Source of the DNA: Vitrella brassicaformis CCMP3155 | Taxonomy: Eukaryota > Protista > Chromerida | Assembly (NCBI GenBank): GCA_001179505.1 | Contig: CDMY01000785.1 | Location: 1 to 20,294, forward strand | Direction: 5' to 3' | DNA: 20,294 nt | Shown: positions 1 to 18,206 of the stretch, in pieces | Layout of the letters: each line of letters begins with the position of its first letter | How positions within the stretch are numbered: position 1 is the stretch's first letter | Program-made: the position numbers and the translations under genes | The notes under the pieces: generated by a model | Told to the model about the DNA's origin: nothing | What the model saw: only the letters and a program-made list of their open reading frames with translations | Databases searched by the model: none

Positions 1-2302
1 ACCAGACGAAAGAGGCCCTTGGCAGCTCAGAAGACGGGCGCGGGCTCTGCTGTCGGGGGGGAGGGAGTTGAAGAGCTCGTTGAAGCGGAACTTGTGCAGT
101 TGATCGGTCAGGCGCTGCTGTAGCCGAACCTGCGGTCTCGAGAGAAAGTCTTGGAGGGAGGGGAGGGAGAAGGAGGGGCCGACCACCTCAGAGATGGCAG
201 CGAGGGCGGGGACTGCCGGTCGAAGCCATGGCAATCCAAAAGAGCAGCGGGCCCACCCTGAGGCATCCACGGTGCTCCTCGGAACCGGCTAGAGACGTCA
301 AAAGCCGTCACACCGATCGAGCCCAGAAAAGCAGCACGGGCAATCGTGGATGCGGAGACAAGGCCAAACCCTCCCAGCCGGATGGGTAGCTGCACTTGTG
401 CGGAAACCGAGTCGGGGAAGTCGCCGGGAAAGCGGAACATGCGCCTGAATGCCCTGATAATGGCGGCGTCATGTCGCTCGGCGGCTGCCAGGGAGACATC
501 GGATTCTGGGGGGAGGAGGCGCAGCCAATAGTTCAGCCGGGGGGATGCACAATAGCGGAGAAGTAGGCCTGAGCCCTGTAATCCCTTCTGAGCAAAAGTC
601 ACGATTGCGTCGAGCAGCGGTTGGTGGCCGTTGGTGATCTTCTCGAGGCTATGCTGGATGAAAGAGTTGCCGCCAAGCGGGCAGCCGAGGACAGTGATGC
701 CATCAGTGGAGCACTTGACGCCGGAAGCAGCGATGTCCGCCGGGATGTCGGAGTCTTGTTGCCAGCGGGGGCTCCATGCAGCGCTCTTGTCTCTCCGCAG
801 CCGCAACTTCTTCTCGGCCAGAAGCTGCTCGGCTCTGTCCACATACCCCGTGACACGTGTCTCGTCCAGTCCACCATCGATGTCATCCATGAACGCACTA
901 ACGAAGGCGTCGGGGAACTCCTCTTGCAGCTTGACGAGGGCGGGATGGAGGCCCAGGCAGAAGAGGAAAGGGCCCGCCGCGTCGCCTTGCTGAGTGCCCT
1001 CCTGACTGAGGATGGTCTCTGTGCGTCCGTCCTCCATCCGATACCATAGTTCGGCCGGGGTACCGTAGAACGGCCACTTTGTGCCGAGCGCGTCGAGGAT
1101 CGCCTGTCGGTCGATGCTGTTGAAGGCGTTCTTGCAATCCAAAGTCACCAAAACCCGTCTATCGGAGTCATCGCGGCGTGTCTCCATGTAGGTCTGACAG
1201 GCCCGGAAAATCTTCTCTCCGCCTGCCGACGTGCCAACCGCAAACTGTAGAGGCGCGAAGTCGTCCTCAAAGGCCAGCTTGTCCTCCATACAGACTGCCT
1301 TCGTCACCCATCTCCGAAGCACATCACCCACAGCAATCGGCCGGACACCACCGTTGTCCTTCATCAGAGCGAAAGGCGGGCCGCCGAGAGAGTCGTGGTG
1401 CAGCTGTCCGGCATGTTCCCAGCAAGCATCCGGTTGACAAAGGAGGGTAGAGGGACGGCCCCGTCTTCTGCCGAGGCGTCACCCTCTCCCATGCAGGCAC
1501 GAAGATGCTCATACCGCCATCCCGTAGGGCCGGCTGCGGAGCCTCGCGGCGCCGTCTTGAGGGCAGCTAGTAGAACTCTGGGCGGGACCGTGAGAGGGAC
1601 GGCCGGCTCATCTGGGCTGTTCTGGGTCTGCGGCTTTCTAGGGAGCGGGGCTGCCGGGTGTAGTTCCTTGAGCTGCTGGAGCGTTGCCGCTGTCGCCGGA
1701 GCGACCTTGGCGGCCGTCAGCCGCCTCGCCGCACGCGACAGCTCTCCCTGTCTCACAAATCTCTCTATTTCCTCCAGGGATGGCTCAGACACGCCGTCCA
1801 CCGGTCCATCGCCGCGTGGAGCGAATACGTGGCGACCCTGTTCAGCAAAATTCCTAGACTCGTCGAGCAATCCTTGCCACTCTCCAGCCCAGAACCGCTT
1901 GAAGCGAGCACGCCATTTGCGGTGGCCGCCGTCTCCGCCGCGATTCATCGGGAAGAGCAGCATAGTCGGCACGAAAATGGCTATCAGGCAGCCGACATCC
2001 GAGTCCTCTTCGTCCTTCACGTACTTCTCGGTAGTGTCCACCACCATCCTTAGCGATTCCCGGACACACCCAGGTATGCGGCATATGGTGCGAACGCCCA
2101 GCTTGAAGTGATCATCCCGTTGCTCGGCGGTGAGGCTGCGGAGATAATCAAGCCCACGCTGCGGGAAAATGCCTTTCGAGCGAAACCAGTGGGAGTCGTG
2201 GGGCGGGTCTGGTGGTGGACCTGAGGGAGGTGGAGGTCCTCCGCCGTTTGGGGGCGGCCCATTGCCGCCCGAGTCACCATCTCCTGCTCCGCCATCCCCC
2301 GG
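1..2302 (-). pseudogene. Reverse transcriptase region of the retroelement ORF (copy A), frameshifted
   Basis: ORFs 1364..2047 and 108..1364 join if the 1-nt deletion at about 1372 is repaired (gcgaaaggc here, gcgaaaaggc in copy B). A second frameshift at about 233 restores PWLRPAVPALAAISEVV...FNSLPPDSRARARLLSCQGPLSSG, open to base 1. Catalytic FMDD at 882-893. A 15-nt deletion near 1767 removes KLRAA. Confidence 0.92.
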
Positions 2303-2602
2303 NNNNNNNNNNNNNNNNNNNNNNNNNNNNNNNNNNNNNNNNNNNNNNNNNNNNNNNNNNNNNNNNNNNNNNNNNNNNNNNNNNNNNNNNNNNNNNNNNN
2401 NNNNNNNNNNNNNNNNNNNNNNNNNNNNNNNNNNNNNNNNNNNNNNNNNNNNNNNNNNNNNNNNNNNNNNNNNNNNNNNNNNNNNNNNNNNNNNNNNNNN
2501 NNNNNNNNNNNNNNNNNNNNNNNNNNNNNNNNNNNNNNNNNNNNNNNNNNNNNNNNNNNNNNNNNNNNNNNNNNNNNNNNNNNNNNNNNNNNNNNNNNNN
2601 NN
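2303..2602. other. Assembly gap (300 N)
   Basis: Run of 300 N. Confidence 1.
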
Positions 2603-3852
2603 CCGTTGTCCTTCATCAGAGCGAAAAGGCGGGCCGCCGAGAGAGTCGTGGTGCAGCTGTCCGGCATGTTCCCAGCGAGCATCCGGTTGACAAAGGAGGG
2701 TAGAGGGACGGTCCCGTCTTCTGCCGAGGCGTCACCCTCTCCCATGCAGGCACGAAGATGCTCATACCGCCATCCCGTAGGGCCGGCTGCGGAGCCTCGC
2801 GGCGCCGTCTTGAGGGCAGCTAGTAGAACTCTGGGCGGGACCGTGAGAGGGACGGCCGGCTCATCTGGGCTGTTCTGGGTCTGCGGCTTTCTAGGGAGCG
2901 GGGCTGCCGGGTGTAGTTCCTTGAGCTGCTGGAGCGTTGCCGCTGTCGCCGGAGCGACCTTGGCGGCCGTCAGCCGCCTCGCCGCACGCGACAGCTCTCC
3001 CTATCTCACAAATCTCTCTGCCGCTCGCAGCTTGATTTCCTCCAGGGATGGCTCAGACACGCCGTCCACCGGTCCATCGCCGCGTGGAGCGAATACGTGG
3101 CGACCCTGTTCAGCAAAATTCCTAGACTCGTCGAGCAATCCTTGCCACTCTCCAGCCCAGAAGCGCTTGAAGCGAGCACGCCATTTGCGGTGGCCGCCGT
3201 CTCCGCCGCGATTCATCGGGAAGAGCAGCATAGTCGGCACGAAAATGGCTATCAGGCAGCCGACATCCGAGTCCTCTTCGTCCTTCACGTACTTCTCGGT
3301 AGTGTCCACCACCATCCTTAGCGATTCCCGGACACACCCAGGTATGCGGCATATGGTGCGAACGCCCAGCTTGAAGTGATCATCCCGTTGCTCGGCGGTG
3401 AGGCTGCGGAGATAATCAAGCCCACGCTGCGGGAAAATGCCTTTCGAGCGAAACCAGTGGGAGTCGTGGGGCGGGTCTGGTGGTGGACCTGAGGGAGGTG
3501 GAGGTCCTCCGCCGTTTGGGGGCGGCCCATTGCCGCCCGAGTCACCATCTCCTGCTCCGCCATCCCCCGGGTCACCGGGTGGCGGGCCGGGCGGCGGGGG
3601 GGGCCGAATCCGCCTCCACCTCGAGCACCGCGGACGCCTCGTGGGGCTCCACGCGTTCCTCTACCGCGACCTCTCCCCCGAGCTCGGCGCGGCGGCGGTA
3701 CGGGCTGCGAAGCACCACCTTCACCATCCCCGCCTCGCCCCGTCGTATCACGGTCATCTAAGGGCATGTCTCGGGTGTCTAGAGCCGGGTTGACCGTGTC
3801 TCGGTTGATCGAAGGCGGTGGCGGTGGCGGGGGAGGCGGAGGGGGTGGGGGT
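2603..3852 (-). repeat. Copy B: near-identical duplicate of the Pro-rich linker and pre-RT region
   Basis: 2603-3562 matches 1351-2302 and 2957-3852 matches 4153-5052. Private CAG>TAG stop at 3001-3003. Confidence 0.95.
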
Positions 3853-4152
3853 NNNNNNNNNNNNNNNNNNNNNNNNNNNNNNNNNNNNNNNNNNNNNNNN
3901 NNNNNNNNNNNNNNNNNNNNNNNNNNNNNNNNNNNNNNNNNNNNNNNNNNNNNNNNNNNNNNNNNNNNNNNNNNNNNNNNNNNNNNNNNNNNNNNNNNNN
4001 NNNNNNNNNNNNNNNNNNNNNNNNNNNNNNNNNNNNNNNNNNNNNNNNNNNNNNNNNNNNNNNNNNNNNNNNNNNNNNNNNNNNNNNNNNNNNNNNNNNN
4101 NNNNNNNNNNNNNNNNNNNNNNNNNNNNNNNNNNNNNNNNNNNNNNNNNNNN
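3853..4152. other. Assembly gap (300 N)
   Basis: Run of 300 N. Confidence 1.
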
Positions 4153-5637
4153 ACCTTGGCGGCCGTCAGCCGCCTCGCCGCACGCGACAGCTCTCCCTGT
4201 CTCACAAATCTCTCTGCCGCTCGCAGCTTGATTTCCTCCAGGGATGGCACCGGTCCATCGCCGCGTGGAGTGAATACGTGGCGACCCTGTTCAGCAAAAT
4301 TCCTAGACTCGTCGAGCAATCCTTGCCACTCTCCAGCCCAGAACCGCTTGAAGCGAGCACGCCATTTGCGGTGGCCGCCGTCTCCGCCGCGATTCATCGG
4401 GAAGAGCAGCATAGTCGGCACGAAAATGGCTATCAGGCAGCCGACATCCGAGTCCTCTTCGTCCTTCACGTACTTCTCGGTAGTGTCCACCACCATCCTT
4501 AGCGATTCCCGGACACACCCAGGTATGCGGCATATGGTGCGAACGCCCAGCTTGAAGTGATCATCCCGTTGCTCGGCGGTGAGGCTGCGGAGATAATCAA
4601 GCCCACGCTGCGGGAAAATGCCTCTCGAGCGAAACCAGTGGGAGTCGTGGGGCGGGTCTGGTGGTGGACCTGAGGGAGGTGGAGGTCCTCCGCCGTTTGG
4701 GGGCGGCCCATTGCCGCCCGAGTCACCATCTCCTGCTCCGCCATCCCCCGGGTCACCGGGTGGCGGGCCGGGTGGCGGGCCGGGTGGCGGGCCGGGCGGC
4801 GGCGGGGGTGCGAATCCGCCTCCACCTCGAGCACCGCGGAGCCCCACTTGGTCTCCACGCGTTCCTCTACCGCGACCTCTCCCCCGAGCTCGGCGCGGCG
4901 GCGGTACGGGCTGCGAAGCACCACCTTCACCATCCCCGCCTCGCCCCGTCGTATCACGGTCATTTAAGGGCATGTCTCGGGTGTCTAGAGCCGGGTTGAC
5001 CGTGTCTCGGTTGATCGAAGGCGGTGGCGGTGGCGGGGGAGGCGGAGGGGGTGGGGGTGGGGGTGGTGGTGGTGTCGGTGGAGGTGGGGGTGATGGAGGA
5101 GGCGGTTGAGAGCCTCCTTCCGGCTTCGAAGCGGAGGGCGGCGGGGGAGGGTTGGGCGCAGTCTGCTGTCGTCGCAACTCACGGGCCCGACGGCCTCTCC
5201 CCCTGTGTTGCCCCACCTCCCGCTGACGGAAGCATTGACCGCCACAGAAAGCCGTACATATCATACATCTGCCAAAACCTCTGCTCCTTGCTGAGCGCCG
5301 GCGGGCGTCTGCCGGCGGCTGAGAGGAGGGCGTAGGGGCGGCGGAGTCATCAAGCCAAGCTGACAGAACGTCTCTCGAGTCGCGAAGCCCTTCTGGAGGA
5401 TCCGGGTTCTCCGGATCAAAGCCTTCACGTGCTGCAATCTCCGGTGCGGCTGAAGGTCGTGTGTCGTCCCACGCATTGAGGATGTCCTCCGATTCTCGAA
5501 GGCCCCCGGGCGGGTCACGATTGTCCGGATCGTAGCCTTCGCGCGACGTCATGTCAGCCAGAGCCTCAGGTCTGCCAGGGGGAAGCGTGGGGCGATCGCC
5601 GCCATTTGGCCCCGCCGCCAAAGATGGGTCCGCACCC
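4153..5637 (-). pseudogene. Copy C: linker part of the retroelement ORF (acidic repeat, Cys motif, poly-Pro, RG-rich, pre-RT)
   Basis: Open frame throughout (part of track ORF 3318..7508). Private 15-nt deletion near 4248 removes DGVSE. The 12-nt unit ggtggcgggccg is expanded at about 4759-4795. Confidence 0.85.
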
Positions 5638-5937
5638 NNNNNNNNNNNNNNNNNNNNNNNNNNNNNNNNNNNNNNNNNNNNNNNNNNNNNNNNNNNNNNN
5701 NNNNNNNNNNNNNNNNNNNNNNNNNNNNNNNNNNNNNNNNNNNNNNNNNNNNNNNNNNNNNNNNNNNNNNNNNNNNNNNNNNNNNNNNNNNNNNNNNNNN
5801 NNNNNNNNNNNNNNNNNNNNNNNNNNNNNNNNNNNNNNNNNNNNNNNNNNNNNNNNNNNNNNNNNNNNNNNNNNNNNNNNNNNNNNNNNNNNNNNNNNNN
5901 NNNNNNNNNNNNNNNNNNNNNNNNNNNNNNNNNNNNN
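5638..5937. other. Assembly gap (300 N)
   Basis: Run of 300 N. Confidence 1.
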
Positions 5938-6476
5938 CCTCCCCTGCCCCCTGTCAAATCGCGGTCATCCGCAATATCCATCCATCCGCATCCATCCATG
6001 GTGTCTCCCACTTCACTTGTCCTGTCGACTTCTCGGCCATCTCCTGTGGGCAGGGCTGCATTGCCATTGACCGAATCTATGTGGGTGTCCTGATCCTGCT
6101 GTTGTTGCAGGCCACTAGAAGCCACTTCCTCCTCCCATTCCTCACATGACGGTGCCGCCGCCCCCTCTTGCAAACGCCTGCGGGTGCGGCGTTGCCGTTG
6201 TCTATCAGTGCGACGCTGGCGTCGGATGCCCGAGCGGGGGGAGGTCTGTAGATCGGCGATGCCCTCTGGGTGAGAAGGAGGCGGGACGAGGCGGGTCGGT
6301 CCATTGGTGGCAGCTGGGGGACGTGTCTCCGATGGACTCCCAAGGCCGTCTGACGGGCCCGCGGCATGGCCGTCAACTCTCGCGACCTCAGCGCAGGCGC
6401 AGGGCCACTCACCACATCGGCACCAGTCGCCTGCAACTTCCCCACGCGCTGCGGGGTCACTCCCATCCAACGGTAG

Positions 6477-6960
6477 CAGGGACATGAAGTGGTTGCCAGC
6501 GTAGAAAATGAAGAGTATCGGCGGGGGTGGAGGGAAGGGCTCCAGGACCGTCCTGGGCCGCTGCACACGTCCGCCCTCAGGGTGAACTGTGTCATGCTCG
6601 CGGAGCAGGTGCGGGACGGTGGGGTCTTCGAATTGTTCCTCGGCAAGGACACAGAGAACGATGGAGGCTCCCGTCACGTTGGCCAGAGAGCGTACGTCAC
6701 ACTCGGTAAGTGACGAATTCTGCATGACGTCCAAGATGTGGTCGCGAGGACTCGCAAAAAAGGCGTCCAATTGACCCGACGAACGCCGCCGTTCAAGGTC
6801 CTCCACCACCAGCCGGCGCAATTCTGCCGGTCCGGGGATAGGGATGGGAAGACGATCAGCCGGCTGTCTATTGGAGAGCCGAAGCCGCTCCAGACGCAGC
6901 TGGCGAATCGCCGCCTCAAGCAGACAATTGTTGCTGTCACCGCTCTCGTTAACGAAACGG
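6477..6960 (-). other. OTU-family cysteine protease (deubiquitinase-like) domain
   Basis: FVNESGDSNNCLLEAAIRQL (Cys box, Cys at 6924-6926), AELRRLVVEDLE, TECDVRSLANVTGASIVL and LFIFYAGNHFMSL (His box, His at 6489-6491) match the order of OTU motifs. Confidence 0.8.
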
Positions 6961-7355
6961 AACGCGATGCTGTAGCCTGCAGAGTGAAGAAGGCCACCCC
7001 GCTGTTGAAGTTGGCTGAGAGACGGAAGCCGAGGGGGGAACACCATGCTGCGCAGTGCAGCCGCTCGCACGGGGCTCTCAACAGCGATTGTCGCCAAAGC
7101 AAGACGCACTGTGTCTTCGCAGAGCTCACCGGTGCCTATCATCATCCGGATCCGAGCGGGGTTGTCATCGCGCGAGCGGCCGGCGGCGAGAGGGCCAACC
7201 AGCAGTCCAAAGGTCCGCAAGAGACATGTCACAGGTAGGTGAAAGCGCTCCTCATAGAGGCGGCCCTCAGCAAATCCATCCCACGAAGAGGGAGGCCACC
7301 CCCACTCCCTTTCTAGCTCCAAGAGGGCGGCATGCCAGGGCTGTTCTGCAAAAGA

Positions 7356-7505
7356 ACAGTGCTCCTCGTTCCCCACCATGCGCGAATTCCGGCGGGCGGA
7401 CTCCTCTGCCTCCACACAAGGCCCGCAGACGAGCGAATTGCAGGCCCGGCACGACAGATGGCGAAAGTCCTCGCCAGATGGCCGTGGAAGAGAGCATCCA
7501 GGACA
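7356..7505 (-). other. FYVE-like zinc finger
   Basis: CPGC-x14-CRAC-x4-CGPC...HC. RHLSCRACNSLVCGPC resembles the FYVE R(R/K)HHCRxCGxVxCxxC core but lacks the HH pair. Confidence 0.55.
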
Positions 7506-7895
7506 CACGCGGTCCTCAGAGGAGGGGGGAGGGGGTCGGAGGGGATCGGGGGCGAGGACAAGGGCGGAGACATCAGAGACACCAAGCAGACACTCTGGGC
7601 AGAAGGCGACGGGTCACGCGGGAGAGAGGGCCAGTGGTCATGGAGGCAGACGAAGTCCCTCGCAGGCCGGTCCTCAAAACACACCGGACATGTCTCAAAT
7701 GCAGAATCCAAACTCATCACCCCGAAGAGCAAAAAGAGTAGAGACAGGGCGAGTCCGCCAGGTAGCATACGGGGGGAAGTCAGAGTATTGACCGAACGCG
7801 AGTCCGCACACTCAAACAACAGTGTAGAGCATGCAGCGGCCACCCGTTCGCGTGTCTCTTCGGCTAGAGCCGGTCGGCAAAATCAGGAAGGTCCA

Positions 7896-8184
7896 GGCAC
7901 ACGGCCTGCAGCAACGGTCACTCCTCAATAGGCACACGGCCCACCTCGACGCCGGCTCACGGCCGGAGAAGGCAATTCCTCAGGCCCACGGCCAGGCGGC
8001 ACAGGCGCACGGCCTGTCGCAGAGAGCTGTCCTCCAGCAACCACACTCGACACTGGCACACGGCCAGCAACCACACTCGACACCGGCGCACGGCCGGCCG
8101 GGGCGTCCACCGGGCGCAAACAGGCTCACGGCCTGGCAGCGACGTCTTCAGATACACGCGGCACGCTTACACTGGCACACGGCC
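7896..8184. promoter_or_regulatory. Array of nine GGCNCACGGCC motifs in the element 5' UTR (copy D)
   Basis: Exact matches start at 7896, 7931, 7954, 7983, 8004, 8055, 8085, 8123 and 8174; includes a 30-nt tandem duplication at 8034-8093. The regulatory role is inferred. Confidence 0.6.
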
Positions 8185-8312
8185 AGTCACGAAAGCCTCA
8201 GATAGCCTCCGAAAGCCGCAGGCCAGCAGGTCCTTCGCGGGGTCGGTAAGGGGTCAACAAGACGTGGGAAGCCGAGGCATGCCATGCATTATCTGTGCTG
8301 TCCTCTCTGCCG

Positions 8313-8356
8313 CTGTCTGTTTGTCTGTCTGTCTGTTGTGTGTCTGTGTGTCTGTC
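8313..8356. repeat. Imperfect (CTGT)n/(TG)n microsatellite
   Basis: ctgtctgtttgtctgtctgtctgttgtgtgtctgtgtgtctgtc, about 35 bp from the 5' junction of copy D. Confidence 0.8.
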
Positions 8357-8845
8357 TTCTGAGTGTAGCTGATCTGCCGGCACACTGCTGGTGCCTGAAG
8401 GGGGGGAGAGACGATCGCAAGAGCTCAAAGCGTGCAAGAGAGATCCTTTGCGTGAAACCTTTAGCTGAAGCATCAAAAAGCACTGGCTGGCCACCTGGGG
8501 ATGGGCGGTATCTACGTATGGAGTCATGGTGCAGGATGCACGCATGCACGCCGCCTTCAAGCTGCTGCTGGGGTGGCGTGTGTGCGCCGTTGTGTGCCTG
8601 CCTGCCTGTATGTTGCCGTCGTTCGCAGCGCATTGCATATCCTCCTGTTTGCTGCATCTGCCCTCTGCGTGCTGCGTGTTGCGTGTCCGGGTTGCATGTT
8701 AGGGTGCGTGTTTTCATGTTGGACAGACCGACAGGGGACTTGGCCGCCAGGCCGCCTAGGGTGCTCCCTGAAACCGCTACTACAAAAAACCTGTAGGCAG
8801 CAGCAGGATGGCTCCCGCTATCGCACGTCCTACGGTTGATTCATC

Positions 8846-9145
8846 NNNNNNNNNNNNNNNNNNNNNNNNNNNNNNNNNNNNNNNNNNNNNNNNNNNNNNN
8901 NNNNNNNNNNNNNNNNNNNNNNNNNNNNNNNNNNNNNNNNNNNNNNNNNNNNNNNNNNNNNNNNNNNNNNNNNNNNNNNNNNNNNNNNNNNNNNNNNNNN
9001 NNNNNNNNNNNNNNNNNNNNNNNNNNNNNNNNNNNNNNNNNNNNNNNNNNNNNNNNNNNNNNNNNNNNNNNNNNNNNNNNNNNNNNNNNNNNNNNNNNNN
9101 NNNNNNNNNNNNNNNNNNNNNNNNNNNNNNNNNNNNNNNNNNNNN
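8846..9145. other. Assembly gap (300 N)
   Basis: Run of 300 N. Confidence 1.
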
Positions 9146-9455
9146 CCCACGAAGAGGGAGGCCACCCCCACTCCCTTTCTAGCTCCAAGAGGGCGGCATG
9201 CCAGAGCTGTTCTGCAAAAGGACAGTGCTCCTCGTTCCCCACCATGCGCGAATTCCGGCGGGCGGACTCCTCTGCCTCCACACAAGGCCCGCAGACGAGC
9301 GAATTCCAGGCCCGGCACGACAGATGGCGAAAGTCCTCGCCAGATGGCCGTTGAAGAGAGCATCCAGGACACACGCGGTCCTCAGAGGAGGGGGGAGGGG
9401 GTCGGAGGGGATCGGGGGCGAGGACAAGGGCGGAGACATCAGAGACACCAAGCAG

Positions 9456-9728
9456 ACACTCTGGGCAGAAGAGGTCCCGGCCAATTGGGCACTCAATGAG
9501 GGGTGGGGGAGTTGCTGACGTGGATCCCGCCTGATGAAGCGCACACGCTCGTCCCTCGACGTAGATGGGAAGCTGAGCTCTCTGGGTCTCGGCCAGCCGC
9601 ACCACGCAATAGGTGCAGCAGCGGTGGGAGCTCTGGTCTCCCCGCGACGGGTCACGCGGGAGAGAGGGCCAGTGGTCATGGAGGCAGACGAAGTCCCTCG
9701 CAGGCCGGTCCTCAAAACACACCGGACA
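9456..9728 (-). other. RING-like zinc finger (atypical spacing)
   Basis: CPVC-x10-CLH...HRCCTYC...CPIGRDLFCPEC: CxxC, C, HxxCxxC and CxxC ligands as in C3HC4 RINGs, with insertions. Confidence 0.55.
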
Positions 9729-9932
9729 TGTCTCAAATGTAGATCCAAACTCATCACCCCAAAGAGCAAAAAGAGTAGACACAGGGCGAGTCCGCCAGGT
9801 AGCATACGGGGGGAAGTCAGAGTATTGACCGAACGCGAGTCCGCACACTCAAACAACAGTGTAGAGCATGCAGCGGCCACCCGTTCGCGTGTCTCTCCGG
9901 CTAGAGCCGGTCGGCAAAATCAGGAAGGTCCA

Positions 9933-10218
9933 GGCACACGGCCTGCAGCAACGGTCACTCAATAGGCACACGGCCCACCTCGACGCCGACTCACGGCCGG
10001 AGAAGGTAATTCCTCAGGCCCACGGCCAGGCGACACAGGCGCACGGCCTGTCGCAGAGAGCTGTCCTCCAGCAACCACACTCGACACTGGCACACGGCCA
10101 GCAACCACACTCGACACCGGCGCACGGCCGGCCGGGGCGTCCACCGGGCGCAAACAGGCTCACGGCCTGGCAGCGACGTCTTCAGATACACGCGGCACGC
10201 TTGCACTGGCACACGGCC
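9933..10218. promoter_or_regulatory. Second copy of the GGCNCACGGCC array (copy E)
   Basis: Eight exact matches (9933, 9965, 10017, 10038, 10089, 10119, 10157, 10208) plus one G>A variant at 9988. Confidence 0.6.
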
Positions 10219-10671
10219 AGTCACGAAAGCCTCAGATAGCCTCCGAAAGCCGCAGGCCAGCAGGTCCTTCGCGGGGTCGGTAAGGGGTCAACAAGACGTG
10301 GGAAGCCGAGGCAGGCTCCCACCGAGGTGCTTTGCACTGGGACTCGAACAAGCAAGGAGGCGCAGTAGCGCCGGGTGAAATTGGGTTCAGGGGAAGACGA
10401 AACAGGTATCGTCAGGTCCGTCACGATGAGACGGACGCAGTGGCGCCCTCAGGCGCGGGCGGCGATGCCGCAGAAAGGAGAAAACCCCTCTGGAGACTGG
10501 GGGCTGCGAGCTGATTCCCTTTCCCTGGGACGCCTGGGACGCCAAGCGAAAGCACTCATATATCTCAGCGCATCTCCTCACGCTGCAGCTGTCTGTACGC
10601 ATTTCTCTTGCTGAAGCGCGAGGTTGGCTGAGACCGAACTTTAAGGGTTACTATCCGCCTAACTCACAACC

Positions 10672-13261
10672 GTGGTGATGCCGTGTAAGGCACATCCTCG
10701 TTCGTGCACCTTGCACAGTGCGTATATTCTCTCTATTGCTACTGCTTTGTTGGGGCGTCCAGGCACGGCGATCAGAGATGAAGCAGTGTCTCGGATGAAC
10801 ACAGAACAGCTATTGTCCTCTCTGCGCGCGAATGGAATTGACCCTGGTGCAGCGCCCAAGATACGAAGCGAAGACAATGAGCCGCAACTTTGTGTGAGCC
10901 TTCAAGTCTTGAAGGAGACGACCCCCTATGTCTATGCGCATCCCCTGCCGAACGCCGTCCTCGTCTCGCCTTACACAACAATTGCCTTCAGGCCGAAGGA
11001 CAAGGTGGACAGAGACAGCATTGACGGCAAGATTAGCGTCCGGGGAGAAGAATCGGGCGAGCACTCAAATGGAAAGATGGACCTTCTTCAGGACGGCCGA
11101 ACGGTATGGTTCAGGCCTGACGAACCCTTCAAGCCCGGCGAGAAAGCCTACGTGAACGTGCGTTCGGGTATCACAACGCGCACTGGGAAAGCGCTGCCCG
11201 CGGCCCAGTGGAGCTTCACCATGTCATGGCGCAAAGAAGACACATATTCCATGGAACCCCGTAACTCTACAGGCAAATCTGTGTCGAGCCCGGAGGACCT
11301 GCAGCTTCTCAAGAAGATTGGAGATATGATGTGGATACCAGGTGGCAACTCTACGGTCATCCAAGAAGGCCCCGAGCATATAATGGGCAGTGAGGATTGC
11401 GAAGATGAAGGGAAGGGTGGCGGTGTTATTCATACGCCAAACTGTGCGTACAGGTAGGCGATGGTAGGCGATAGCATGTAGATGGTAGAGATGTCTTTAC
11501 CTGGATCGGTCATTTCGCGACTGGCCAGGACACTCCCTCACAGGTACCCACGAATGGAGGTGACATCTGGCGACCTGACGAGACTCTCCCACGGATATGT
11601 CTTTACCTCTTCTTGCAACCTCAACCTTTCCTCTCAATCCGACAAGTTCCATATGATCACGACCTCCCTTGGTGATCCAATTTTTTACGAACCATCACCA
11701 TCGAGGGCAAGTATGTATGTCTGTACGTTTTCCCCGACAAACAACCGGCGGCTAATCCTTCGGGAAGCAAACGGCACGGTCGTCATTGGAGGGGCCGATT
11801 ACTCGAATGCCGCCGCATTCACGGCAGATCATGGGGCCCGCTTGAATTATCATGACTTCCAGCTCTCAGCGCGATCTTACCGGAAGGGCACTGGCCTTGT
11901 TCTGATATATGACCCTCAACCAATTAACATTCACAAGACACGCGGGAAGCTTAAATTTGGGGAGTCATCGAGTATGACGTGGCTAACAGGATTCACTATT
12001 CAAGAAATCACGCCAGAAGGTTCGCAAGAGACAGGCAATTACTATGCTTTTTGCTCATTCATCACGCCTCCTTTCTTCCAGGTCAAGTGATACTGGAATG
12101 GCGAAGTTGGGACCACTTGCCTCGCATGCTCTGGGAGACCCCGTCAAATGTGAAAGACTATCATATTTACGGCCATGCCGATGAAGGCGTCAGTGGGTAC
12201 GTAGAGTCATTGTCCGCGTACATACAACGTACATACGCGTAACGTCATAACGTTCAATGCTTACCTCTTGGGCAGGCGCGTGTGGGATATTGCACATGCG
12301 AACGCATTGGACGAGATGGACGACGGGAGCATTCTCATATCGCTGCGATTCCTGCATCAATTGATCAAGATACACAGGGAGACAGGCGAAATTATATGGC
12401 GGCTCGGGGGCAGTGGTGGAAACTTCGGATAACGCCGGGGAGAAGGGTAGATGTCTCATTGTGATTGGTGGTTGCAGGATTATCGGTGATCCAAGGGGGC
12501 GTTTCACCGGACAACACGACGGGGAGATATTGGAGATAACAAGATCACTCTCTTTGACAATCACTATAGAAGAGCAGGGAAGAGGACGGCTCGCGCTGTG
12601 GACTATCAGCTCGAGCTTAACGCCACAGAGAAGGTTGCCCGTTTCGTGTCATCGTACGATACCGGCGTTAAATCGTATGAAACACGAATACTTGAGCTCA
12701 GAAACTCATTACTTCTCATATGTATTCCTGTGCCTGCTTGTCCTTCTCAGCTACGCAACCGGCGCATACAGGCGCCTGTCCAACGCCAATCGTGCGATTT
12801 CCCTGGGGTTTCAAATGAAATCAGGACTGCCTAGCGGGAATCCTTTCTACCTCGAAGTGACCGGTGAAGGAGATTTGGTGGTCAAGATGCAATTTGTGTC
12901 TCGAAATCTTTGGGCGTACCGGGCTCTTAAGGCCCCTTGGATCGGTACGCCTACGTGGCCTCCGACAGCCCTCCTCGACGCCAACAACCCGACCAGGACA
13001 CCGCGGCTTCATTTCAGCTGGAATGGTGCCACGGAGGTGAAGAAGTGGCGAATTATGACGGGGAAGAGTTGTGATGACAAGGAACTGACAACAGCTTTTG
13101 CAGAAGTCGACAAGACACAGTTTGAACACTGGGTGGATATCCCGGAGGGAACCCGCAAGTGTCGGTGCTATCAGGTTGCTGCTCTAGGTGAAAACGGAGA
13201 GGAAATGAACAGATCTAAAGTGGTGGCCACATCAGCCTGCTCGGGTGGACAGGTAGAGTGA
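10672..13261 (+). CDS. Arylsulfotransferase (ASST-like) with N-terminal Ig-like domain; multi-exon; possibly a pseudogene
   Basis: NYHDF, EWRSWDH, WDIAHAN, ISLR, IWRLGG, GQHD, LFDN, RLSNANRAISLG and SWNGATEV motifs. GT-AG introns at 11454-11528, 12020-12081, about 12197-12275 and about 12675-12750. Frameshift at about 12531. Confidence 0.85.
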
Positions 13262-14096
13262 GGCGTGAAAACATTTGAGCGCCTTGCACTCACCGTCGTC
13301 GTTGGTTTAAAAAAAAACAAAAAACATTTCCGATTTCATCACCCGAAAACGAAACCAGAGCGTGTCGAATTACTTTGTTTTGATGTTGCTTGTGCATGCG
13401 TCAACATTCCTTTTTCCTCATTCCACGCACAATGTCAAATTGATGGTTTCCGAAGATCTGATGGTCTGTCCATTGCCACGTTGCTACATCAGAAAACGTC
13501 GCAATATGAATTCGGGAAAGAAACACAGCACAAAGTTGTCTCCTGATTCACCGCTCATCTCTCCTGATTCGGCGGGGGAAGGACTCAGTCGTGTGGACGG
13601 CCCTGTCGCAGAATTGCTGCTCTCACCCACCACTGTGCCGCATTGGGGTAGCCGCATTGGGAGAGGCAAGCTGGCACAGTGGTGGAAGGTGACAGACAAG
13701 AGAACAGGCGTGTGATGTGAGAAATGTGCTGGCTGTGAATGCCTTCAGTGATTCAGTAAAACAGGACGAAGGCCGCCATGTTCTACATACATATGTATGC
13801 ATATACATCGGGGGGTTTTGAGCATCATTGACAATGATTTGTCTCTGTCTCACTGAGCTCCTTGCTTGTTTTCCTCATCTTGTCAACGAATGAAAATATT
13901 GTGGGTTGGAGAGTGGCATACACTTGGCATCAGAAAACTGCAAAACTGTGACCATGGTGGTGGTGGTTAAGGGTAAGATTGTCCGTGTGTCCATGCGCTG
14001 GGACGGTCGATTACATGTTCGCATCCAAACTATTGACAGCAACGATCAAAGCATTCGCTACCTACCCAGGCACGCCCACCTACCCACCCCTTGCAA

Positions 14097-14381
14097 TCAA
14101 CGAGGGTGGAAAGGCCCCCGCTCTAGCAGCAGCCCCTCAGCAAAACCCGCCCTCTCCTGCCCATTCCACCTGCTTGCCCGCCACGCCCTGCTCCGCACCA
14201 TGTGTGCGTTGCCCTTCTGCAGCAGCACAGTAAGTCGAGCTTACCACCTGTCCACTGCTGTCTCACGGAAGAACTCCACATCGCCCTCCTCCATATAGAC
14301 AGGTGGCCGCACATGCCGGGCCATACGGTTGAGGACGGCAGCCGCCTCGTCCCCCCACCGTCCATAGCTCTCCGCCGACAG
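14097..14381 (-). mobile_element. 5'-truncated 3' fragment of an RLE-type non-LTR retrotransposon
   Basis: LSAESYGRWGDEAAAVLNRMAR...DRW*ARLTVLLQKGNAHMVR matches the C-terminal ExxGxWG...QxGNA signature of CRE-like ORFs; one internal TAA. Confidence 0.75.
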
Positions 14382-14592
14382 ATGTATGCTAAGTGATATT
14401 GTGAGAAAGTGCGCCTGAAAACGAGGAGTAAGCATGAGGTGAATTCATGCTTTCGGCATGTACTCGGCGCGCCAGGCCCCACTTTGTCTGTCTTCCCCTC
14501 CCCCACAAGTCATCGACGGCTTTCCAACTGCAGTATTTGTGCCAGTGTACAACTGCCATATTGTCTTCTACCGAACATTGACCCATTGAAGC

Positions 14593-16525
14593 TTGCCTTT
14601 TGAAGCCCCCTCCCGCGTTCAAGGGGGAGGGGGCGACATTGCATGGTCCGCACAGACATCTGACTTCACAGGATGTGCCTTTACTGCAATCACCCATCAA
14701 AAACAGTCGATTCTTGGCTTCTGGACCAGTCCTACCGCTAATGACTCAGTCCTCTTCATCCGCTCTCCCCGGAGGTGCGAGCGGAATGCGTCCCTGCCCT
14801 GTGTGTTCCAAGTGACAGAGGAAGAGTACTGTGGTATAAACTAAGACACCGTCCGCATTTGTGGGAATGATGCTTTCTTTGCCGTCAGGACATAGCACTC
14901 GGCGAGTATGATCCCAAAACAGGTGCTTTCTGTGCCCGTCAGTGTGGGACCTGCACAGATGATGACGACTGTGCCGCCGGACCAGGAGGAAGCGACCAGT
15001 GCTGTCCTAAGCTGATCTTAAAAGATGAAATTGACTGTCGGCACACGAAGTGGGCACTGTGTGTCTCGACACCCGAATCTACTGAGATCCTGCGAGAGCA
15101 GTCCAGCCTCATCGTGGCTGAATACGAATGTACGCGCGTACACAAACCCGGCCCGGTGTTGTGCTACGGAAATGTGTAATGTGTACACGCAAGATGGACA
15201 TTACGCAACCACGGCAAGGAGTCTTCGACTGGGGAGACTGTGACGCCATCGCTCAAGTCGCTAACGACCTCGATCTTCGCTTCCGCCTGTATACACTAGT
15301 GTGGCATCGTGCGGTGGGTGTACGATGTACGCATGCATGACGATACTCATGCTATTCACGTGTATACAGATGCCCAGCTGGATGCTCAATCGGCCGCCAC
15401 GGAAACGGAGGGGCATCTTGTTAGACCACATAGAGAAGGGCATGGAGCACTTTCGTGATGACCCCACCCTTTGGTCCATCGACGTTGTCAATGAGGGTAT
15501 GCATACAGCCCGGTCCAGTCGCTTCCGCGTGGAACGTATACGTGTCATGTATGCAGTCCTTCCTGACGACCAGCCCATCCCGGAGCAGCCCAGGCTGAGA
15601 GAATCCTACTGGACCAAGACGGAAGGTGGTGACGACTGGCCAGCTCTCGCCTTCAGGTCTGAACTTATTTGTGCCGCGTTAATCACATGTGTTTTTCACA
15701 CAGGAAGGCCAAGCAGACAGTCGGCGACAGGAGGAATGTTCGGCTGCTCATCAATGACTATGGAATCAACTCGATGTCGCGACGAGGGGTGGGAATGCAC
15801 ACCGTCTAGGCAAGAGTGCCTAGTGTTGACGGACGCCTGTGTGTCTGTACGCAGGGGCGCCCGAAAGCTGCTGCCATGTACCATTATTGCCGGCAGCTGC
15901 ATGGAAAGGGGGTGCCCGTGGACGGTGTGGGTGTGCTGGCGCACATAAACATTGCGAAGCGCGACTTCCACGGTATGTAGTGCTTCACGCTATCATAGAA
16001 GTGCGCATGTCCCGACTCTATGCGAGTGTACGCATACAGGTGTGCGGAAACAGTTCAAGCGCTTGAGCGAGATCGGTCTGGAAGTTCAGATATCTGAGGT
16101 TGCCAATGAAAGGAGTCGTCTGTTGCTCCTTCAGCTTGACGTCTCTTGCGGTCACTGGCACGGCAGCCGATTCAAAGCATGCGATGGCATGAACGACCTC
16201 AGGGAGTTCATGCAGGTGGGCACAGACAGATGCAGGCAGGAACGGGCACTTGTGTATCTGTCCACGCTGAAGGTCGAGGCATACAAGGCCATGGTGCGCA
16301 TATGCATGGACGCGGTCAACTGCACAGGTGACGGATGGACACATGCACACGTTAAAGAAAAGAACCTTGGGTATGCATGTCCATCTATGCGTCGGCGTGT
16401 GGGGCGTCTCCGACGATGGGTCTTGGCTACATAGCGAGTCGCGCAATAAGACGCCACTCCTGTTCGACTCGCATTTGAAGAAGAAGCGGGCCTCTTATGG
16501 CGTCAAGGAAGCCATGCAGACGTGA
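14593..16525 (+). CDS. Glycoside hydrolase family 10 (xylanase-like), divergent, multi-exon; true start uncertain
   Basis: Exons give TLVWH, WSIDVVNE (acid/base Glu 15493-15495), LLINDY, GVPVDGVG, GLEVQISE/LDV (nucleophile Glu 16096-16098), VWGVSDDGSW, PLLFD, and TGA at 16523-16525. Canonical introns include 15314-15369, 15497-15556, 15657-15703, 15973-16039 and 16099-16134. Confidence 0.88.
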
Positions 16526-18206
16526 TCTGCGCTTGTATGATGTGAGCTTGGCTTGGATTGTTGCCAGCACTCCTCCTTGTGAGACCTCGTGAGACTATTT
16601 TTGCTTGTCTGGCGGGGGAGGCGCTGGCAAGCAAAAAGGAGGCGCCAACCAACGACACAACCAACGACACACGCGCCAGCCAGTGATAAAACCTAGGTGG
16701 GCGTTTACGACGAGGCGTTCAAGAGTTGTCAGGCAGCAAAAATGGATAAGAATGCATCTCAAGACACGTGTCTTGACGTGTGTCCAGAATCCTGCTGTGT
16801 CACATTTCTTTATTCTGCCCTGTTGCCTGTTTGATGTCGATCGCCGGTCGCTCATGTCCCCAAGACGTTTCAGTAGGGATATCAGAAACTGTGCTATGCC
16901 TTCTCGCGTCAACAAGACCTGCACACAAAGTGGCAGGGAAATGATGAAATCGAGACTGAGCCCCCTGTAACCATGCCAAGGTATTCACCGCCAATGCCAT
17001 CCCCCTCGACACTTGGTCCAATGGCCTGCTGGTCCACTGGATGTATCGTAACAACGGAGAGGTCATCCAAACAACGTGTGACCTGTTTCCTTAGGTGGGT
17101 TCGAAGAATTTTAGTGTCGGCCAGAAACAGACCGAATGTGTCGAACCTCTGGGGTGTGTGTGTGTGTGCGGACACTGTACAGAGGACGTTCAGCTGAGCC
17201 TCAGCTGGACTCGAGATATGAGGGTAAGCCGGGCCTTTCTTTTTCTTCCTCGCTGACGTCTTTCTGACAAGGCGAATCAGAAATAGCTGCAGTCGGTAGC
17301 GGCGAGGAGAGCATCGAAGGACTCTTATCTGATCATATAGTTAAGGTTAAGCAAGAGAAACGTCACATGCTTACCTGTGATGCGCAAATCCTGTACTTGG
17401 GCTGTTTATCCTGGGATGCGGCATATCTCATCGACATGCAGCCATGCCCATACAGCACTTGACACAATGTCGCGATCGAGCAACAGTATACCTCTCAACA
17501 TGATACACGGCATCGAGAGTACGCGGTAAGCTGCAGGGCATACGCGGTGTGCACGACCGCAGACGTGACCAAATGTGTCTCGTGTCACTCTTGGAAGGGG
17601 TGCACGTATCGCGAACGAGTGGGGTCCGTTCAGTACAGCATGTCTCCTCCACATAGACACATGTACATAGATGCATCCAGGGTGAGCAGTAGGATGAGTG
17701 TGGTGCTCTTTCCATCGATGCATTTAGGTCTTCTGTAATTTATTGTGTTTTGACCTAATACCAGCGGGAGCCGCTTGTGTGCTGTGAATTGCAAGATAAA
17801 ACACACACTCAAACAGGGCGGGTGGCTCGCAGGCAGGTGTGTGTACTCGCTTTACAGCCTCACTCTCCTCAGATGTCTTTCTCAGCAAAATGGTCCGGCA
17901 GGAGTCTGTGCAGAAGAGCCTGACTGTGATTAAGCCCAGTGATTTGCATTCGCGGCTTTATGACGAAGGCGAGTGCTGGAGCCCCCGACAGTCGGACAAC
18001 CATGATGCAAGGATACATATGTGATCTCCGTAGGTTTTTTCTCGATATGAATTGACGCAACACGCGGCCGAGGACAGACCCCGCCCTCTCATTGTGCAAA
18101 TGATTGAGGAGAACACTCCCCTTTCAGTCATATGGATATGTCTCACGCTTTCCGTGCTGTGTGCTCCCATTTGCCCTCTTGTCCAAACGGATAAAAAATA
18201 GACAAT

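What the first reader, a model, noticed from the sequence alone, without database searches (positions are those of the whole stretch)
1..9728. Retrotransposon ORF combining RING-like, FYVE-like and OTU domains ahead of RT: a candidate ubiquitin-editing retroelement
Seen: repairing private lesions between copies gives a RING-like finger, FYVE-like finger and OTU domain in one frame, then a low-complexity linker and a CRE-like RT; the join crosses the unbridged gap 5638-5937. Known: RINGs are commonly E3 ligases and OTUs deubiquitinases. Accessory cysteine proteases occur in some non-LTR clades (Ulp1-type in the NeSL group, Josephin-like in Dualen/RandI). Inference: an element carrying both a ubiquitin writer and an eraser could process or stabilise its own polyprotein or counter host silencing. 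I do not know this architecture from CRE elements, but could not check novelty.
Basis: partly seen in the sequence, partly recalled or inferred. Interest (0 to 1): 0.88.

Follow-up and report, generated by a model that had tools for sequence, protein, structure and literature searches.

The report
Retrotransposon with OTU protease, RING-like finger
The window holds broken, badly scaffolded copies of an algal jumping gene (a non-LTR retrotransposon) whose single giant protein carries zinc fingers and an OTU-type ubiquitin protease ahead of its reverse transcriptase; I found no published report of an OTU domain in this class of element, but the proposed "ubiquitin writer plus eraser" function is untested.

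Summary
The window, most likely from Vitrella brassicaformis, carries degenerate, mis-scaffolded pieces of a non-LTR retrotransposon on the minus strand.

The 300-N gap at 5638-5937 hides about 63 bp and is in frame. Three other Vitrella loci (one same-family) and gap-free contigs from other assemblies run uninterrupted from the Cys-rich N-terminus through the OTU-like domain and a roughly 430-1200-residue low-complexity linker into RT. In four contigs this is one open frame of 2326-2740 codons, ending in a CCHC knuckle and a restriction-like endonuclease.

- **OTU:** supported by fold (AlphaFold pLDDT 82; top 50 PDB matches all OTU), invariant Asn-Cys and His, and a Pfam OTU hit at threshold in a relative.
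- **"FYVE-like" finger:** lacks the FYVE motifs and weakly resembles a NOT4-type C4C4 RING instead.
- **"RING-like" first finger:** no support.
- **Untested:** E3 activity, "ubiquitin editing" and CRE membership.
- **Window copies:** none is intact.

OTU is known in Helentrons and Ginger1, and Ulp1 or Josephin proteases in other RLE LINEs. I found no report of OTU in a non-LTR element, so this is a new variant of a known kind.

The parts
9806..10470 (-). 5' untranslated region of copy 1, with a 30-bp x2 tandem repeat at 10068-10129. The element's 5' boundary lies between 10470 and about 10660.
   Evidence: blastn homology to L003 reaches window 10470. TRF found the repeat. A host ORF on the + strand starts at 10663.
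9146..9805 (-). Copy 1 N-terminal zinc module. ATG at 9805-9803 with a hydrophobic leader; module 1 (CxxC...H...CxxC) at 9594-9737; module 2 knuckle at 9456-9494 with Cys to Gly; module 3 (RING-like) at 9198-9371 with Cys to Trp. There is a frameshift between the leader and module 1. The copy is cut by gap 8846-9145.
   Evidence: HMM A7 hit E 4e-69
8280..8845 (.). Spacer unrelated to the element, with an (ACAG)n microsatellite at 8313-8361. It abuts the 5'-truncated end of copy 2.
   Evidence: No match within the window or to L003/L004; TRF; sequence.
7769..8279 (-). 5' UTR of copy 2, truncated relative to copy 1.
   Evidence: Self-blastn 7606-8279 = 9644-10313, 98%.
7606..7768 (-). Copy 2 start codon (7768-7766), hydrophobic leader and first half of module 1. 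A 172-bp deletion follows (equivalent to 9472-9643 of copy 1) and shifts the frame.
7332..7505 (-). Module 3, a C4C4-type cross-brace zinc finger.
   Evidence: Six invariant Cys plus W-H. PDB profile hits on this stretch: NOT4 RING E 0.0046, HOIP RING1 0.069, RNF144A RING1 0.079. Pfam zf-RING_4 E 0.027 in L004. dN/dS 0.10.
6462..7046 (-). OTU-fold cysteine protease domain. The Asn-Cys motif lies in 6918-6932 and the catalytic-type His in 6483-6497.
   Evidence: AF2 pLDDT 81.6, pTM 0.80. Foldseek PDB top 50 all OTU domains, E 1e-4 to 6e-3. N45, C46 and H191 invariant in 8 lineages. OTUD5 is the top PDB profile hit, E 0.022. Pfam OTU 23.2 bits against a 23.3 cutoff in relative L006. dN/dS 0.19-0.25.
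5940..6461 (-). First part of the low-complexity linker (Arg/Gln/Pro-rich), running up to gap 5638-5937.
   Evidence: the gap is bridged by L003 (63 bp), L002 and P0033.
4626..5636 (-). Second part of the linker (poly-Pro, Gly/Arg-rich), with a small four-Cys knuckle at 5229-5273.
4155..4640 (-). Conserved N-terminal extension of the RT (P0034 residues 1327-1494). It is repeated at 2611-3456 and 1373-2188 in the overlapping contigs on either side of gaps 3853-4152 and 2303-2602.
   Evidence: tblastn of P0034; self-blastn.
258..1373 (-). Reverse transcriptase (Pfam RVT_1 core 681-1361; the catalytic FMDD box lies within 882-896). There is a frameshift at about 1373 against the upstream piece.
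   Evidence: Pfam RVT_1 E 1.6e-14; 58% identity to P0034 1602-1978.
1..234 (-). Post-RT region in another frame (frameshift near 235-258). The element runs off the window before the CCHC knuckle and the restriction-like endonuclease.
   Evidence: tblastn P0034 1986-2063.

Best explanation
The window comes most likely from the chromerid alga Vitrella brassicaformis. It holds degenerate, partly overlapping assembly pieces of a family of non-LTR retrotransposons that carry a restriction-like endonuclease (RLE).

The intact relatives encode one giant protein, from N- to C-terminus:
1. a zinc-binding module of three Cys-rich units, the last a C4C4 cross-brace finger that weakly resembles a NOT4-type RING;
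2. an OTU-fold cysteine protease with a conserved Asn-Cys ... His pair;
3. a variable, low-complexity linker of roughly 430-1200 residues, rich in Pro, Gly and Arg;
4. an N-terminal RT extension and the RT;
5. a CCHC knuckle;
6. a PD-(D/E)xK endonuclease.

Shown here: the order and continuity of the domains, the OTU fold and conserved catalytic-type residues, purifying selection on the N-terminal module, and head-to-tail tandem copies in relatives.

Inferred:
- The element moves by target-primed reverse transcription, as established for R2-type RLE elements.
- The OTU domain is an accessory ubiquitin or ubiquitin-like protease. It would either remove ubiquitin from element or host proteins, protecting the large protein or blunting host restriction, or cut the polyprotein in the linker as viral OTU proteases do. 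This would be the functional counterpart of Ulp1 in NeSL/Utopia and Josephin in Dualen.
- I put about 0.5 on deubiquitinase or UBL-protease activity, about 0.3 on the finger being a working E3, and about 0.9 on the architecture itself.

The copies in the window are dead. They carry a 172-bp deletion, at least three frameshifts and two lost zinc ligands.
For: - **Organism:** RT piece 86-92% identical to Vitrella CCMP3155 gene models. Relatives P0033, P0035 and P0036 are Vitrella proteins.
- **Continuity in Vitrella:** L003, L004 and L013 run gap-free from the zinc module through OTU and linker into RT.
- **Single open frames:** L001 2422 codons, L006 2704, L008 2740, L012 2326 and L005 2103 or more.
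- **Collinearity:** P0034 is collinear with all window pieces.
- **Gap 5638-5937:** equals 63 bp in L003.
- **RT:** RVT_1 E 1.6e-14. The best solved relatives are R2 proteins.
- **RLE:** C, C, H, C, H, E, D, D and K are invariant in 19 relatives.
- **No other enzymatic domains:** no APE or RNase H profile hit anywhere.
- **OTU:**
- **RING-like finger:**
- **Selection:** dN/dS 0.10-0.25.
- **Element ends and tandem copies:**
- **Transcription:** MMETSP transcript P0037 matches the linker.
Against: - The window's own OTU region matches no Pfam or PDB sequence profile. The OTU call rests on a model built from a shallow alignment of 6 sequences, and two of the five models were poor. It also rests on transitive links through relatives.
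- The usual third catalytic residue is not conserved. His+2 is Met, Ala or Val, and Asp at Cys-3 occurs in only 3 of 8 lineages.
- All RING-type matches are below curated thresholds and carry high compositional bias.
- The zinc-module model is poor, with pLDDT 58.7, and its fold matches are not significant, with best E 0.6.
- No enzymatic activity was or could be tested.
- The RLE is not in the window itself.
- The source organisms of the intact relatives are unnamed.
Confidence: 0.8

Rival explanations
1. One reading: the element carries both a ubiquitin writer (a RING E3) and an eraser (an OTU deubiquitinase). Together they would form a ubiquitin-editing module, comparable in logic to A20, that stabilises its own protein or counters host silencing.
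For: - A C4C4 cross-brace finger with NOT4-like spacing sits about 150 residues ahead of the OTU domain. It is the most constrained part of the N-terminus, with dN/dS 0.10.
- Its best sequence-profile matches are all E3 RING domains: NOT4, HOIP RING1, RNF144A RING1 and TRIM32.
- Two of those entries (1wim, 7v8f) also appear among the non-significant fold matches.
Against: - No match reaches a curated threshold. The model is of low confidence.
- The fourth ligand pair (Cys...His) is not conserved in two lineages.
- RING-like folds also serve as plain protein- or nucleic-acid-binding modules.
Confidence: 0.25
2. The zinc module is the element's nucleic-acid or target-binding N-terminus, as in other RLE elements. 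The OTU domain is chiefly a cis-acting polyprotein protease that separates an N-terminal, ORF1-like product from RT-RLE within the long linker.
For: - RLE elements generally carry one to three N-terminal zinc fingers used in target recognition (PMC4640811). No other candidate DNA-binding domain was found in the giant ORF.
- Viral OTU-like proteases process polyproteins as well as deubiquitinate (abstract of PMC5695851, listed).
- A variable linker of roughly 430-1200 residues between the two halves would suit cleavage.
Against: - The known N-terminal fingers of RLE elements are C2H2 or Myb types, not CxxC cross-brace types.
- No conserved cleavage motif could be picked out of the Gly/Pro-rich linker.
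- The flanks of relatives show no common target and no Rfam RNA gene.
Confidence: 0.3
3. The OTU-like domain is a catalytically dead scaffold (a pseudo-protease) kept for binding ubiquitin or another partner.
For: The canonical third catalytic residue is not conserved, and the Asp at Cys-3 is present in only 3 of 8 lineages. Sequence-profile similarity to OTU is marginal.
Against: Asn-Cys and His are invariant across lineages that share only 27-35% identity. They sit at a helix N-terminus and a strand start, as in active OTUs. Cys-His dyads suffice in some papain-like enzymes.
Confidence: 0.12
4. Assembly chimera: 5938-10313 is a host gene or a different element that scaffolding placed next to an ordinary RT element.
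For: The window is a scaffold of at least five contigs joined by 300-N gaps, with overlapping, non-identical ends.
Against: - The same order is found gap-free at three other Vitrella loci and in contigs from at least six other assemblies, as one open frame in four or five of them.
- The element boundaries in L008, L010 and L011 enclose both halves.
Confidence: 0.02

Closest known systems
[quoted passage not shown]
   Same: A single ORF carries N-terminal zinc fingers plus a ubiquitin-like-specific cysteine protease ahead of RT, a CCHC knuckle and RLE (PMC4640811).
   Different: The protease there is Ulp1 (a SUMO-protease fold), not OTU. The fingers are not cross-brace types. No linker of about 1000 residues. 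Those elements target U2 or spliced-leader genes, and no target was evident here.
Dualen/RandI non-LTR retrotransposons with a Josephin-related cysteine protease
   Same: A non-LTR element carrying a deubiquitinase-family cysteine protease as an accessory domain (PMC9977147; PMC8557442).
   Different: Josephin rather than OTU. Dualen also has APE and RNase H, and no Pfam match to either was found here.
Helentrons and Ginger1 DNA transposons encoding OTU cysteine proteases
   Same: The same protease family is recruited by a mobile element (PMC2836005; PMC4067079).
   Different: Those are DNA transposons (Rep/helicase or integrase-like transposase), and their OTU matches Pfam directly. Here the carrier is a retrotransposon, and the OTU is so divergent that only fold and transitive evidence reveal it.
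R2 retrotransposon proteins (solved structures 9nl3, 9dou)
   Same: These are the best solved relatives of the RT (E 1.5e-4). The C-terminal CCHC plus PD-(D/E)xK endonuclease layout is the same.
   Different: R2 has C2H2 and Myb N-terminal domains, no protease, a protein of about 1100-1400 residues, and rDNA specificity.
CRE clade (CRE1/2, SLACS, CZAR)
   Same: An early-branching RLE-type element with N-terminal zinc fingers.
   Different: Membership could not be tested, because no reference sequences were available. No spliced-leader or other RNA gene was found in the flanks.
Viral OTU proteases (nairovirus L, arterivirus PLP2, tymovirus PRO/DUB) and cellular OTUD3/OTUD5/A20
   Same: These are the best fold matches, with TM 0.5-0.63 on the target. 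OTUD5's catalytic Cys motif aligns to the family's Asn-Cys motif. They sit within a large multi-domain replication protein, as in viruses.
   Different: Sequence identity is 9-17%. The acidic residue at His+2 is absent. A20 couples OTU with a zinc-finger E3, which is an analogy only.

Membership tests
OTU cysteine proteases (Pfam PF02338) | OTU fold | tested here: met
   AF2 model of window 6450-7061 has pLDDT 81.6 and pTM 0.80. The Foldseek PDB top 50 are all OTU domains, with probability mostly 1.00 (0.97-1.00) and E 1e-4 to 6e-3.
OTU cysteine proteases (Pfam PF02338) | Match to the family profile at the curated threshold | tested here: inconclusive
   The window's domain gives no hit even at E 10. 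Relative L006 scores 23.2 bits against a 23.3 cutoff (E 1e-4), and L005 gives E 0.028. An 8-sequence profile puts OTUD5 top in the PDB at E 0.022.
OTU cysteine proteases (Pfam PF02338) | Catalytic Cys at a helix N-terminus and His on a C-terminal strand | tested here: met
   N45-C46 and H191 are invariant in 8 lineages. The model's helix starts at residue 46 and a strand at 191.
OTU cysteine proteases (Pfam PF02338) | Third triad residue (Asp or Asn at His+2, or Asp at Cys-3) | tested here: inconclusive
   His+2 is Met, Ala or Val in all lineages. Asp at Cys-3 occurs in L002, L005 and L006 only; the window has Ser there.
OTU cysteine proteases (Pfam PF02338) | Deubiquitinase or UBL-protease activity | not testable with these tools
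   Needs biochemistry.
RING finger (E3 type) | Eight zinc ligands in cross-brace spacing | tested here: inconclusive
   Module 3 has six invariant Cys with the spacing of the NOT4 C4C4 RING. The last Cys...His pair is missing in L004 and P0035.
RING finger (E3 type) | Profile or fold match | tested here: inconclusive
   NOT4 RING E 0.0046 (high bias), HOIP RING1 0.069, RNF144A RING1 0.079. Pfam zf-RING_4 0.027 and zf-RING_5 0.025, both well below their cutoffs. AF2 pLDDT 58.7, and the best Foldseek E is 0.6.
FYVE finger | WxxD, R(R/K)HHCR and RVC motifs of the PI3P pocket | tested here: not met
   None of the three motifs is present in any lineage (alignments). Pfam FYVE gives only E 0.18-0.64, and FYVE is absent from the PDB profile hits.
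RBR E3 ligases | RING1-IBR-RING2 order with a catalytic Cys in RING2 | tested here: not met
   Weak IBR hits (E 0.005-0.1) fall on module 2 and the RING1-like hits on module 3, which is the wrong order. No Rcat motif is present.
Non-LTR retrotransposon, RLE type | RT domain of the non-LTR type | tested here: met
   RVT_1 E 1.6e-14 in the window. The best solved relatives are R2 proteins.
Non-LTR retrotransposon, RLE type | CCHC knuckle and PD-(D/E)xK endonuclease after RT; no APE | tested here: met
   Not in the window, which ends at P0034 residue 2063. In 19 relatives C783, C785, H795, C799, H809, E830, D851, D864 and K908 are invariant. No APE hit was found.
CRE clade | RT groups with CRE references in a phylogeny | not testable with these tools
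   No named CRE, NeSL, R4 or Hero sequences could be retrieved. All homologues found are unnamed.
CRE clade | Insertion into spliced-leader genes | tested here: inconclusive
   No Rfam family was found in the window or in 10 related loci. The flanks of L008-L011 differ from one another.

The most novel reading that the evidence does not exclude
A lineage of retrotransposons has fused a working RING-type E3 ligase and an OTU deubiquitinase to its replication protein. It would be a self-contained ubiquitin-editing module used to reprogramme host ubiquitin signalling during retrotransposition.
Probability: 0.2. Interest if true: 0.8.

Novelty: new variant of a known kind. Interest (0 to 1): 0.55.

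Why it matters
Cysteine proteases of the deubiquitinase and UBL-protease families have now been picked up by RLE-type non-LTR elements at least three times: Ulp1, Josephin and, here, OTU. OTU has also been picked up by DNA transposons. That convergence suggests that handling ubiquitin-like modifications is a general need of mobile elements.

Intact relatives with open frames of 2326-2740 codons (L001, L008, L012) give material to test this directly. The domain is too divergent for profile annotation and is often mis-called by gene finders in GC-rich contigs, so similar cases are probably being missed.

For genome annotation, several Vitrella "unnamed protein" gene models (CEM07952.1, CEM30772.1, CEL99353.1, CEM27167.1) are fragments of this element family.

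Tried and rejected
**Searches that found nothing**
- Single-sequence Pfam and PDB searches of the N-terminal pieces found nothing usable. A 6-sequence OTU profile against the PDB was also blank.
- Alignment-based search for related loci failed because no stretch was conserved enough. Scans of genome contigs and metagenome contigs found no relatives.
- A profile search for short stand-alone OTU relatives found none.
- Rfam found no RNA gene in the window or in related loci.
- Paper searches found no report of OTU or RING in non-LTR elements. The one 'RING finger' hit referred to the anatomy of the RT hand.
- The assembly accessions of the intact relatives are not mentioned in any held paper.

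**Ideas rejected**
- RBR ligase: the modules are in the wrong order.
- FYVE: the defining motifs are absent.
- Signal peptide as a family feature: the hydrophobic leader is absent from L001 and L012.
- The 172 bp missing from copy 2 being an intron: the stretch encodes conserved, in-frame zinc ligands in copy 1, L002 and L003.

**Not done**
Natural intact relatives were used instead.
- No spliced model was needed.

Full report
**What the window is.** The feature reads on the minus strand. There are four runs of exactly 300 N at 2303-2602, 3853-4152, 5638-5937 and 8846-9145. The RT piece is 86-92% identical to gene models of Vitrella brassicaformis CCMP3155. The closest relatives of the N-terminal part are also Vitrella proteins. 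The window is therefore most likely a Vitrella scaffold, or one from a very close relative. The published assembly is a short-read scaffold assembly with only about 1.5 Mb of transposable elements (PMC4501334). The rest of the window (10.6-20.3 kb) holds ordinary host genes, including a Kelch-repeat ORF and a multi-exon gene with Big_5 and GH10-like pieces.

**Gaps and overlaps.** Self-comparison shows that the contig ends on either side of gaps 2303-2602 and 3853-4152 overlap:
- 1351-2302 = 2603-3570 (98%)
- 2957-3852 = 4153-5058 (94%)
- 1704-2302 = 4153-4751 (96%)

The two 5' regions 7280-8279 and 9146-10313 are 98-99% alike, apart from 172 bp (9472-9643) present only in the upper copy. The same stutter around 300-N gaps occurs in two other Vitrella scaffolds, L003 and L004. 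It occurs in none of the gap-free contigs of relatives, so I take it for a scaffolding artefact of a repeated family, though real partial duplication is not excluded.

The decisive gap is 5638-5937. Its flanks map to L003:11097 (plus two bases) and L003:11163. L003 is a same-family copy (about 85% nucleotide identity) with no N between 9099 and 13306, so about 63 bp, or 21 codons, are missing and the frame is kept. L002, a gap-free metagenome contig 78% identical in protein, also reads across the gap, as does the Vitrella gene model P0033.

**Lesions in the window.**
- Copy 1 (ATG 9805-9803) has a frameshift between the leader and module 1. It also has a Cys-to-Gly change in module 2 and a Cys-to-Trp change in module 3. 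It is cut by gap 8846-9145.
- Copy 2 (ATG 7768-7766) lacks the 172 bp. It is then open for 558 codons, through module 3, the OTU-like domain and the first part of the linker.
- The RT part has frameshifts near 1373 and 235-258.
- The element leaves the window at base 1, at the equivalent of residue 2063 of P0034 and ahead of the endonuclease.

No copy here is functional as assembled.

**The architecture is real.** An exhaustive phmmer search of 1.84 billion representatives with the OTU-bearing piece found six clusters. One of them is P0034, 2350 residues on a gap-free 7.5-kb contig (L001). It is collinear with every window piece and has RVT_1 at 1605-1839. Further contexts show the same order:
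- Vitrella loci L003, L004 and L013. L013 has no N at all.
- Contigs L005, L006, L008-L012, from six NCBI assemblies whose organism names the tools did not give.

Uninterrupted frames span everything from the zinc module to the endonuclease: L001 2422 codons, L006 2704, L008 2740 and L012 2326. L005 has 2103 but is cut by the contig start. Six-frame HMM searches confirm both N-terminal modules in all of these. L010 and L011 show head-to-tail copies joined by 20 and 8 bp, which fixes the element ends at about L008:115 and 8617. Both halves therefore lie inside one 8.5-kb unit.

Between the window, L002 and L003, dN/dS is 0.19-0.25 for the OTU domain, 0.10 for the RING-like finger and 0.36 between them. 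A more distant RT relative, L015 (36% identity, GC 41%), shows no such module within 3 kb upstream. Several ORFs of 1250-1430 residues related to the RT lack it too.

**RT and endonuclease.**
- The window's RT matches Pfam RVT_1 at E 1.6e-14.
- The best solved relatives of the RT-endonuclease half are R2 proteins, E 1.5e-4.
- In an alignment of 19 relatives, a C-x-C...H...C knuckle and the H, E, D, D and K of a PD-(D/E)xK nuclease are invariant.
- No APE or RNase H was detected.

This is an RLE-type non-LTR element. I could not obtain named CRE, NeSL, R4 or Hero sequences, so 'CRE-like' stays untested. No Rfam RNA gene lies in the flanks, and the flanks of relatives differ, so there is no sign of spliced-leader targeting.

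**OTU.**
- *Sequence evidence.* The window's domain is invisible to Pfam and to PDB sequences, even with a 6-sequence profile.
- *Structure model.* An AlphaFold model of 6450-7061 built on that alignment is confident, with pLDDT 81.6 and pTM 0.80, though two of five models were poor.
- *Fold matches.* Its 50 best PDB matches are all OTU domains: nairovirus OTUs, OTUD3, OTUD5, A20, Cezanne, Otu1/2 and a Wolbachia OTU. Their E-values run from 1e-4 to 6e-3, and TM reaches 0.63 on the target.
- *More lineages.* With eight lineages, Asn-Cys (at the start of a helix) and His (at the start of a strand) are invariant. OTUD5 then becomes the top PDB profile hit, E 0.022, with its catalytic motif aligned to the family's.
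- *Pfam in relatives.* Pfam OTU scores 23.2 bits against a 23.3 cutoff in L006, and E 0.028 in L005.
- *Third catalytic residue.* It is unclear.

I accept an OTU fold with a Cys/His pair. Activity is inferred.

**Zinc module.** It has three units:
1. CxxC...H...CxxC
2. a C-P-x-C-R-x-x-[FY]-C-P-E-C knuckle
3. C-x2-C-x13-14-C-x1-2-C-x4-C-x2-C, followed by a less conserved Cys...Trp-His

It has none of the FYVE signature motifs. A profile of the whole zinc module (A7) hits RING domains, and the matches fall on unit 3:
- NOT4 C4C4 RING, E 0.0046, with high compositional bias
- HOIP RING1, E 0.069
- RNF144A RING1, E 0.079
- TRIM32 RING, E 0.57

Pfam gives zf-RING_4 E 0.027, zf-RING_5 E 0.025 and IBR E 0.005-0.1, all far below their cutoffs. 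The structure model is poor (pLDDT 58.7) and its fold matches are not significant, although RINGs head the list. The verdict is a cross-brace finger that may be a RING, with no evidence for E3 function. An RBR arrangement is excluded by domain order.

**Mechanism.**
- *Shown:* the domain order, continuity, constraint, and tandem copies.
- *Inferred from what is established for R2-type elements:* target-primed reverse transcription by RT plus RLE.
- *Inferred by analogy* with Ulp1 in NeSL/Utopia, Josephin in Dualen and viral OTU proteases: the OTU domain removes ubiquitin or a ubiquitin-like modifier, cleaves the giant protein in its linker, or both.

The rivals and my probabilities for them are given in the structured fields.

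**Comparison and novelty.** OTU proteases are described in Helentrons and Ginger1 DNA transposons (PMC2836005, PMC4067079). Ulp1 is described in NeSL/Utopia (PMC4640811), and Josephin in Dualen and some Penelope-like elements (PMC9977147, PMC8557442). In four full-text searches I found no report of an OTU or RING domain in a non-LTR retrotransposon. Repbase reports and subscription journals are outside that library, so prior cataloguing cannot be excluded. I rate this a new variant of a known kind: an RLE LINE with a different deubiquitinase-family accessory protease and an unusual zinc module.

**Limits.**
- The alignments are shallow, at 6-8 lineages.
- The organisms of the intact relatives are unnamed.
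- No biochemistry was possible.

Noticed in passing
L010:4982-5001 and L011:5960-5967 (relatives); L001:7404-7468: Relatives sit in head-to-tail tandem. A full 3' end is followed after 8-20 bp by a full 5' end. In L001 the 3' flank contains a 65-bp piece of the ORF (= 6277-6341), as if a 5'-truncated copy followed. The 3' end of the L008 family is a short C-run. No common target sequence was seen.
   Followed up: partly
window 2303-2602, 3853-4152; L003:13308-13607; L004:15166-15465, 16227-16526: Most 300-N gaps inside copies of this family in the Vitrella assembly are flanked by repeated, slightly divergent sequence; window gap 5638-5937 is the exception. Gap-free contigs of relatives show no such duplication. 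This is probably a scaffolding artefact that inflates the apparent length of these loci.
   Followed up: partly
window 8280-8845: A 566-bp stretch between the two 5' copies is unrelated to the element and holds an (ACAG)n microsatellite (8313-8361) 33 bp from the truncated 5' end of copy 2. It could be a flank of a separate insertion or a mis-join.
   Followed up: partly
window 7718-7768 and 9755-9805; L002:172-225; L004:10001-10057: The Vitrella-type copies begin with a hydrophobic, signal-peptide-like leader directly after the ATG. It is absent from L001 and L012, where no in-frame ATG precedes the first CxxC.
   Followed up: no
window 5229-5273: A small four-Cys knuckle (C-x2-C-x3-C-x3-C) lies in the middle of the otherwise low-complexity linker. 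It is conserved in L002.
   Followed up: no
L004:3908-9525: In Vitrella scaffold CDMY01000278.1 a PAZ/Piwi (Argonaute-family) gene lies on the opposite strand, 476 bp upstream of the start of a copy of the second element family.
   Followed up: no
window 18384-19685 (-) and 10663-16431 (+): The host genes beside the element are a Kelch-repeat ORF (Kelch_1 E 1.8e-16) and ORFs on the + strand with a bacterial Ig-like Big_5 domain (E 6.7e-7) and a weak GH10 match (E 1.5e-4).
   Followed up: no
window 8034-8095 and 10068-10129: A 30-bp unit is repeated twice in the 5' UTR of both copies.
   Followed up: no
L006, L008-L011 (gene calls): Prokaryote-style gene calling on these GC-rich contigs splits the giant ORF and calls the OTU region on the wrong strand. 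Protein databases therefore under-represent the N-terminal module; only 6 clusters were found among 1.84 billion representatives.
   Followed up: partly
P0037 (MMETSP Transcript_35747): A transcriptome-derived protein matches the end of the OTU domain and the linker at 77% identity, so at least one related copy is transcribed.
   Followed up: no
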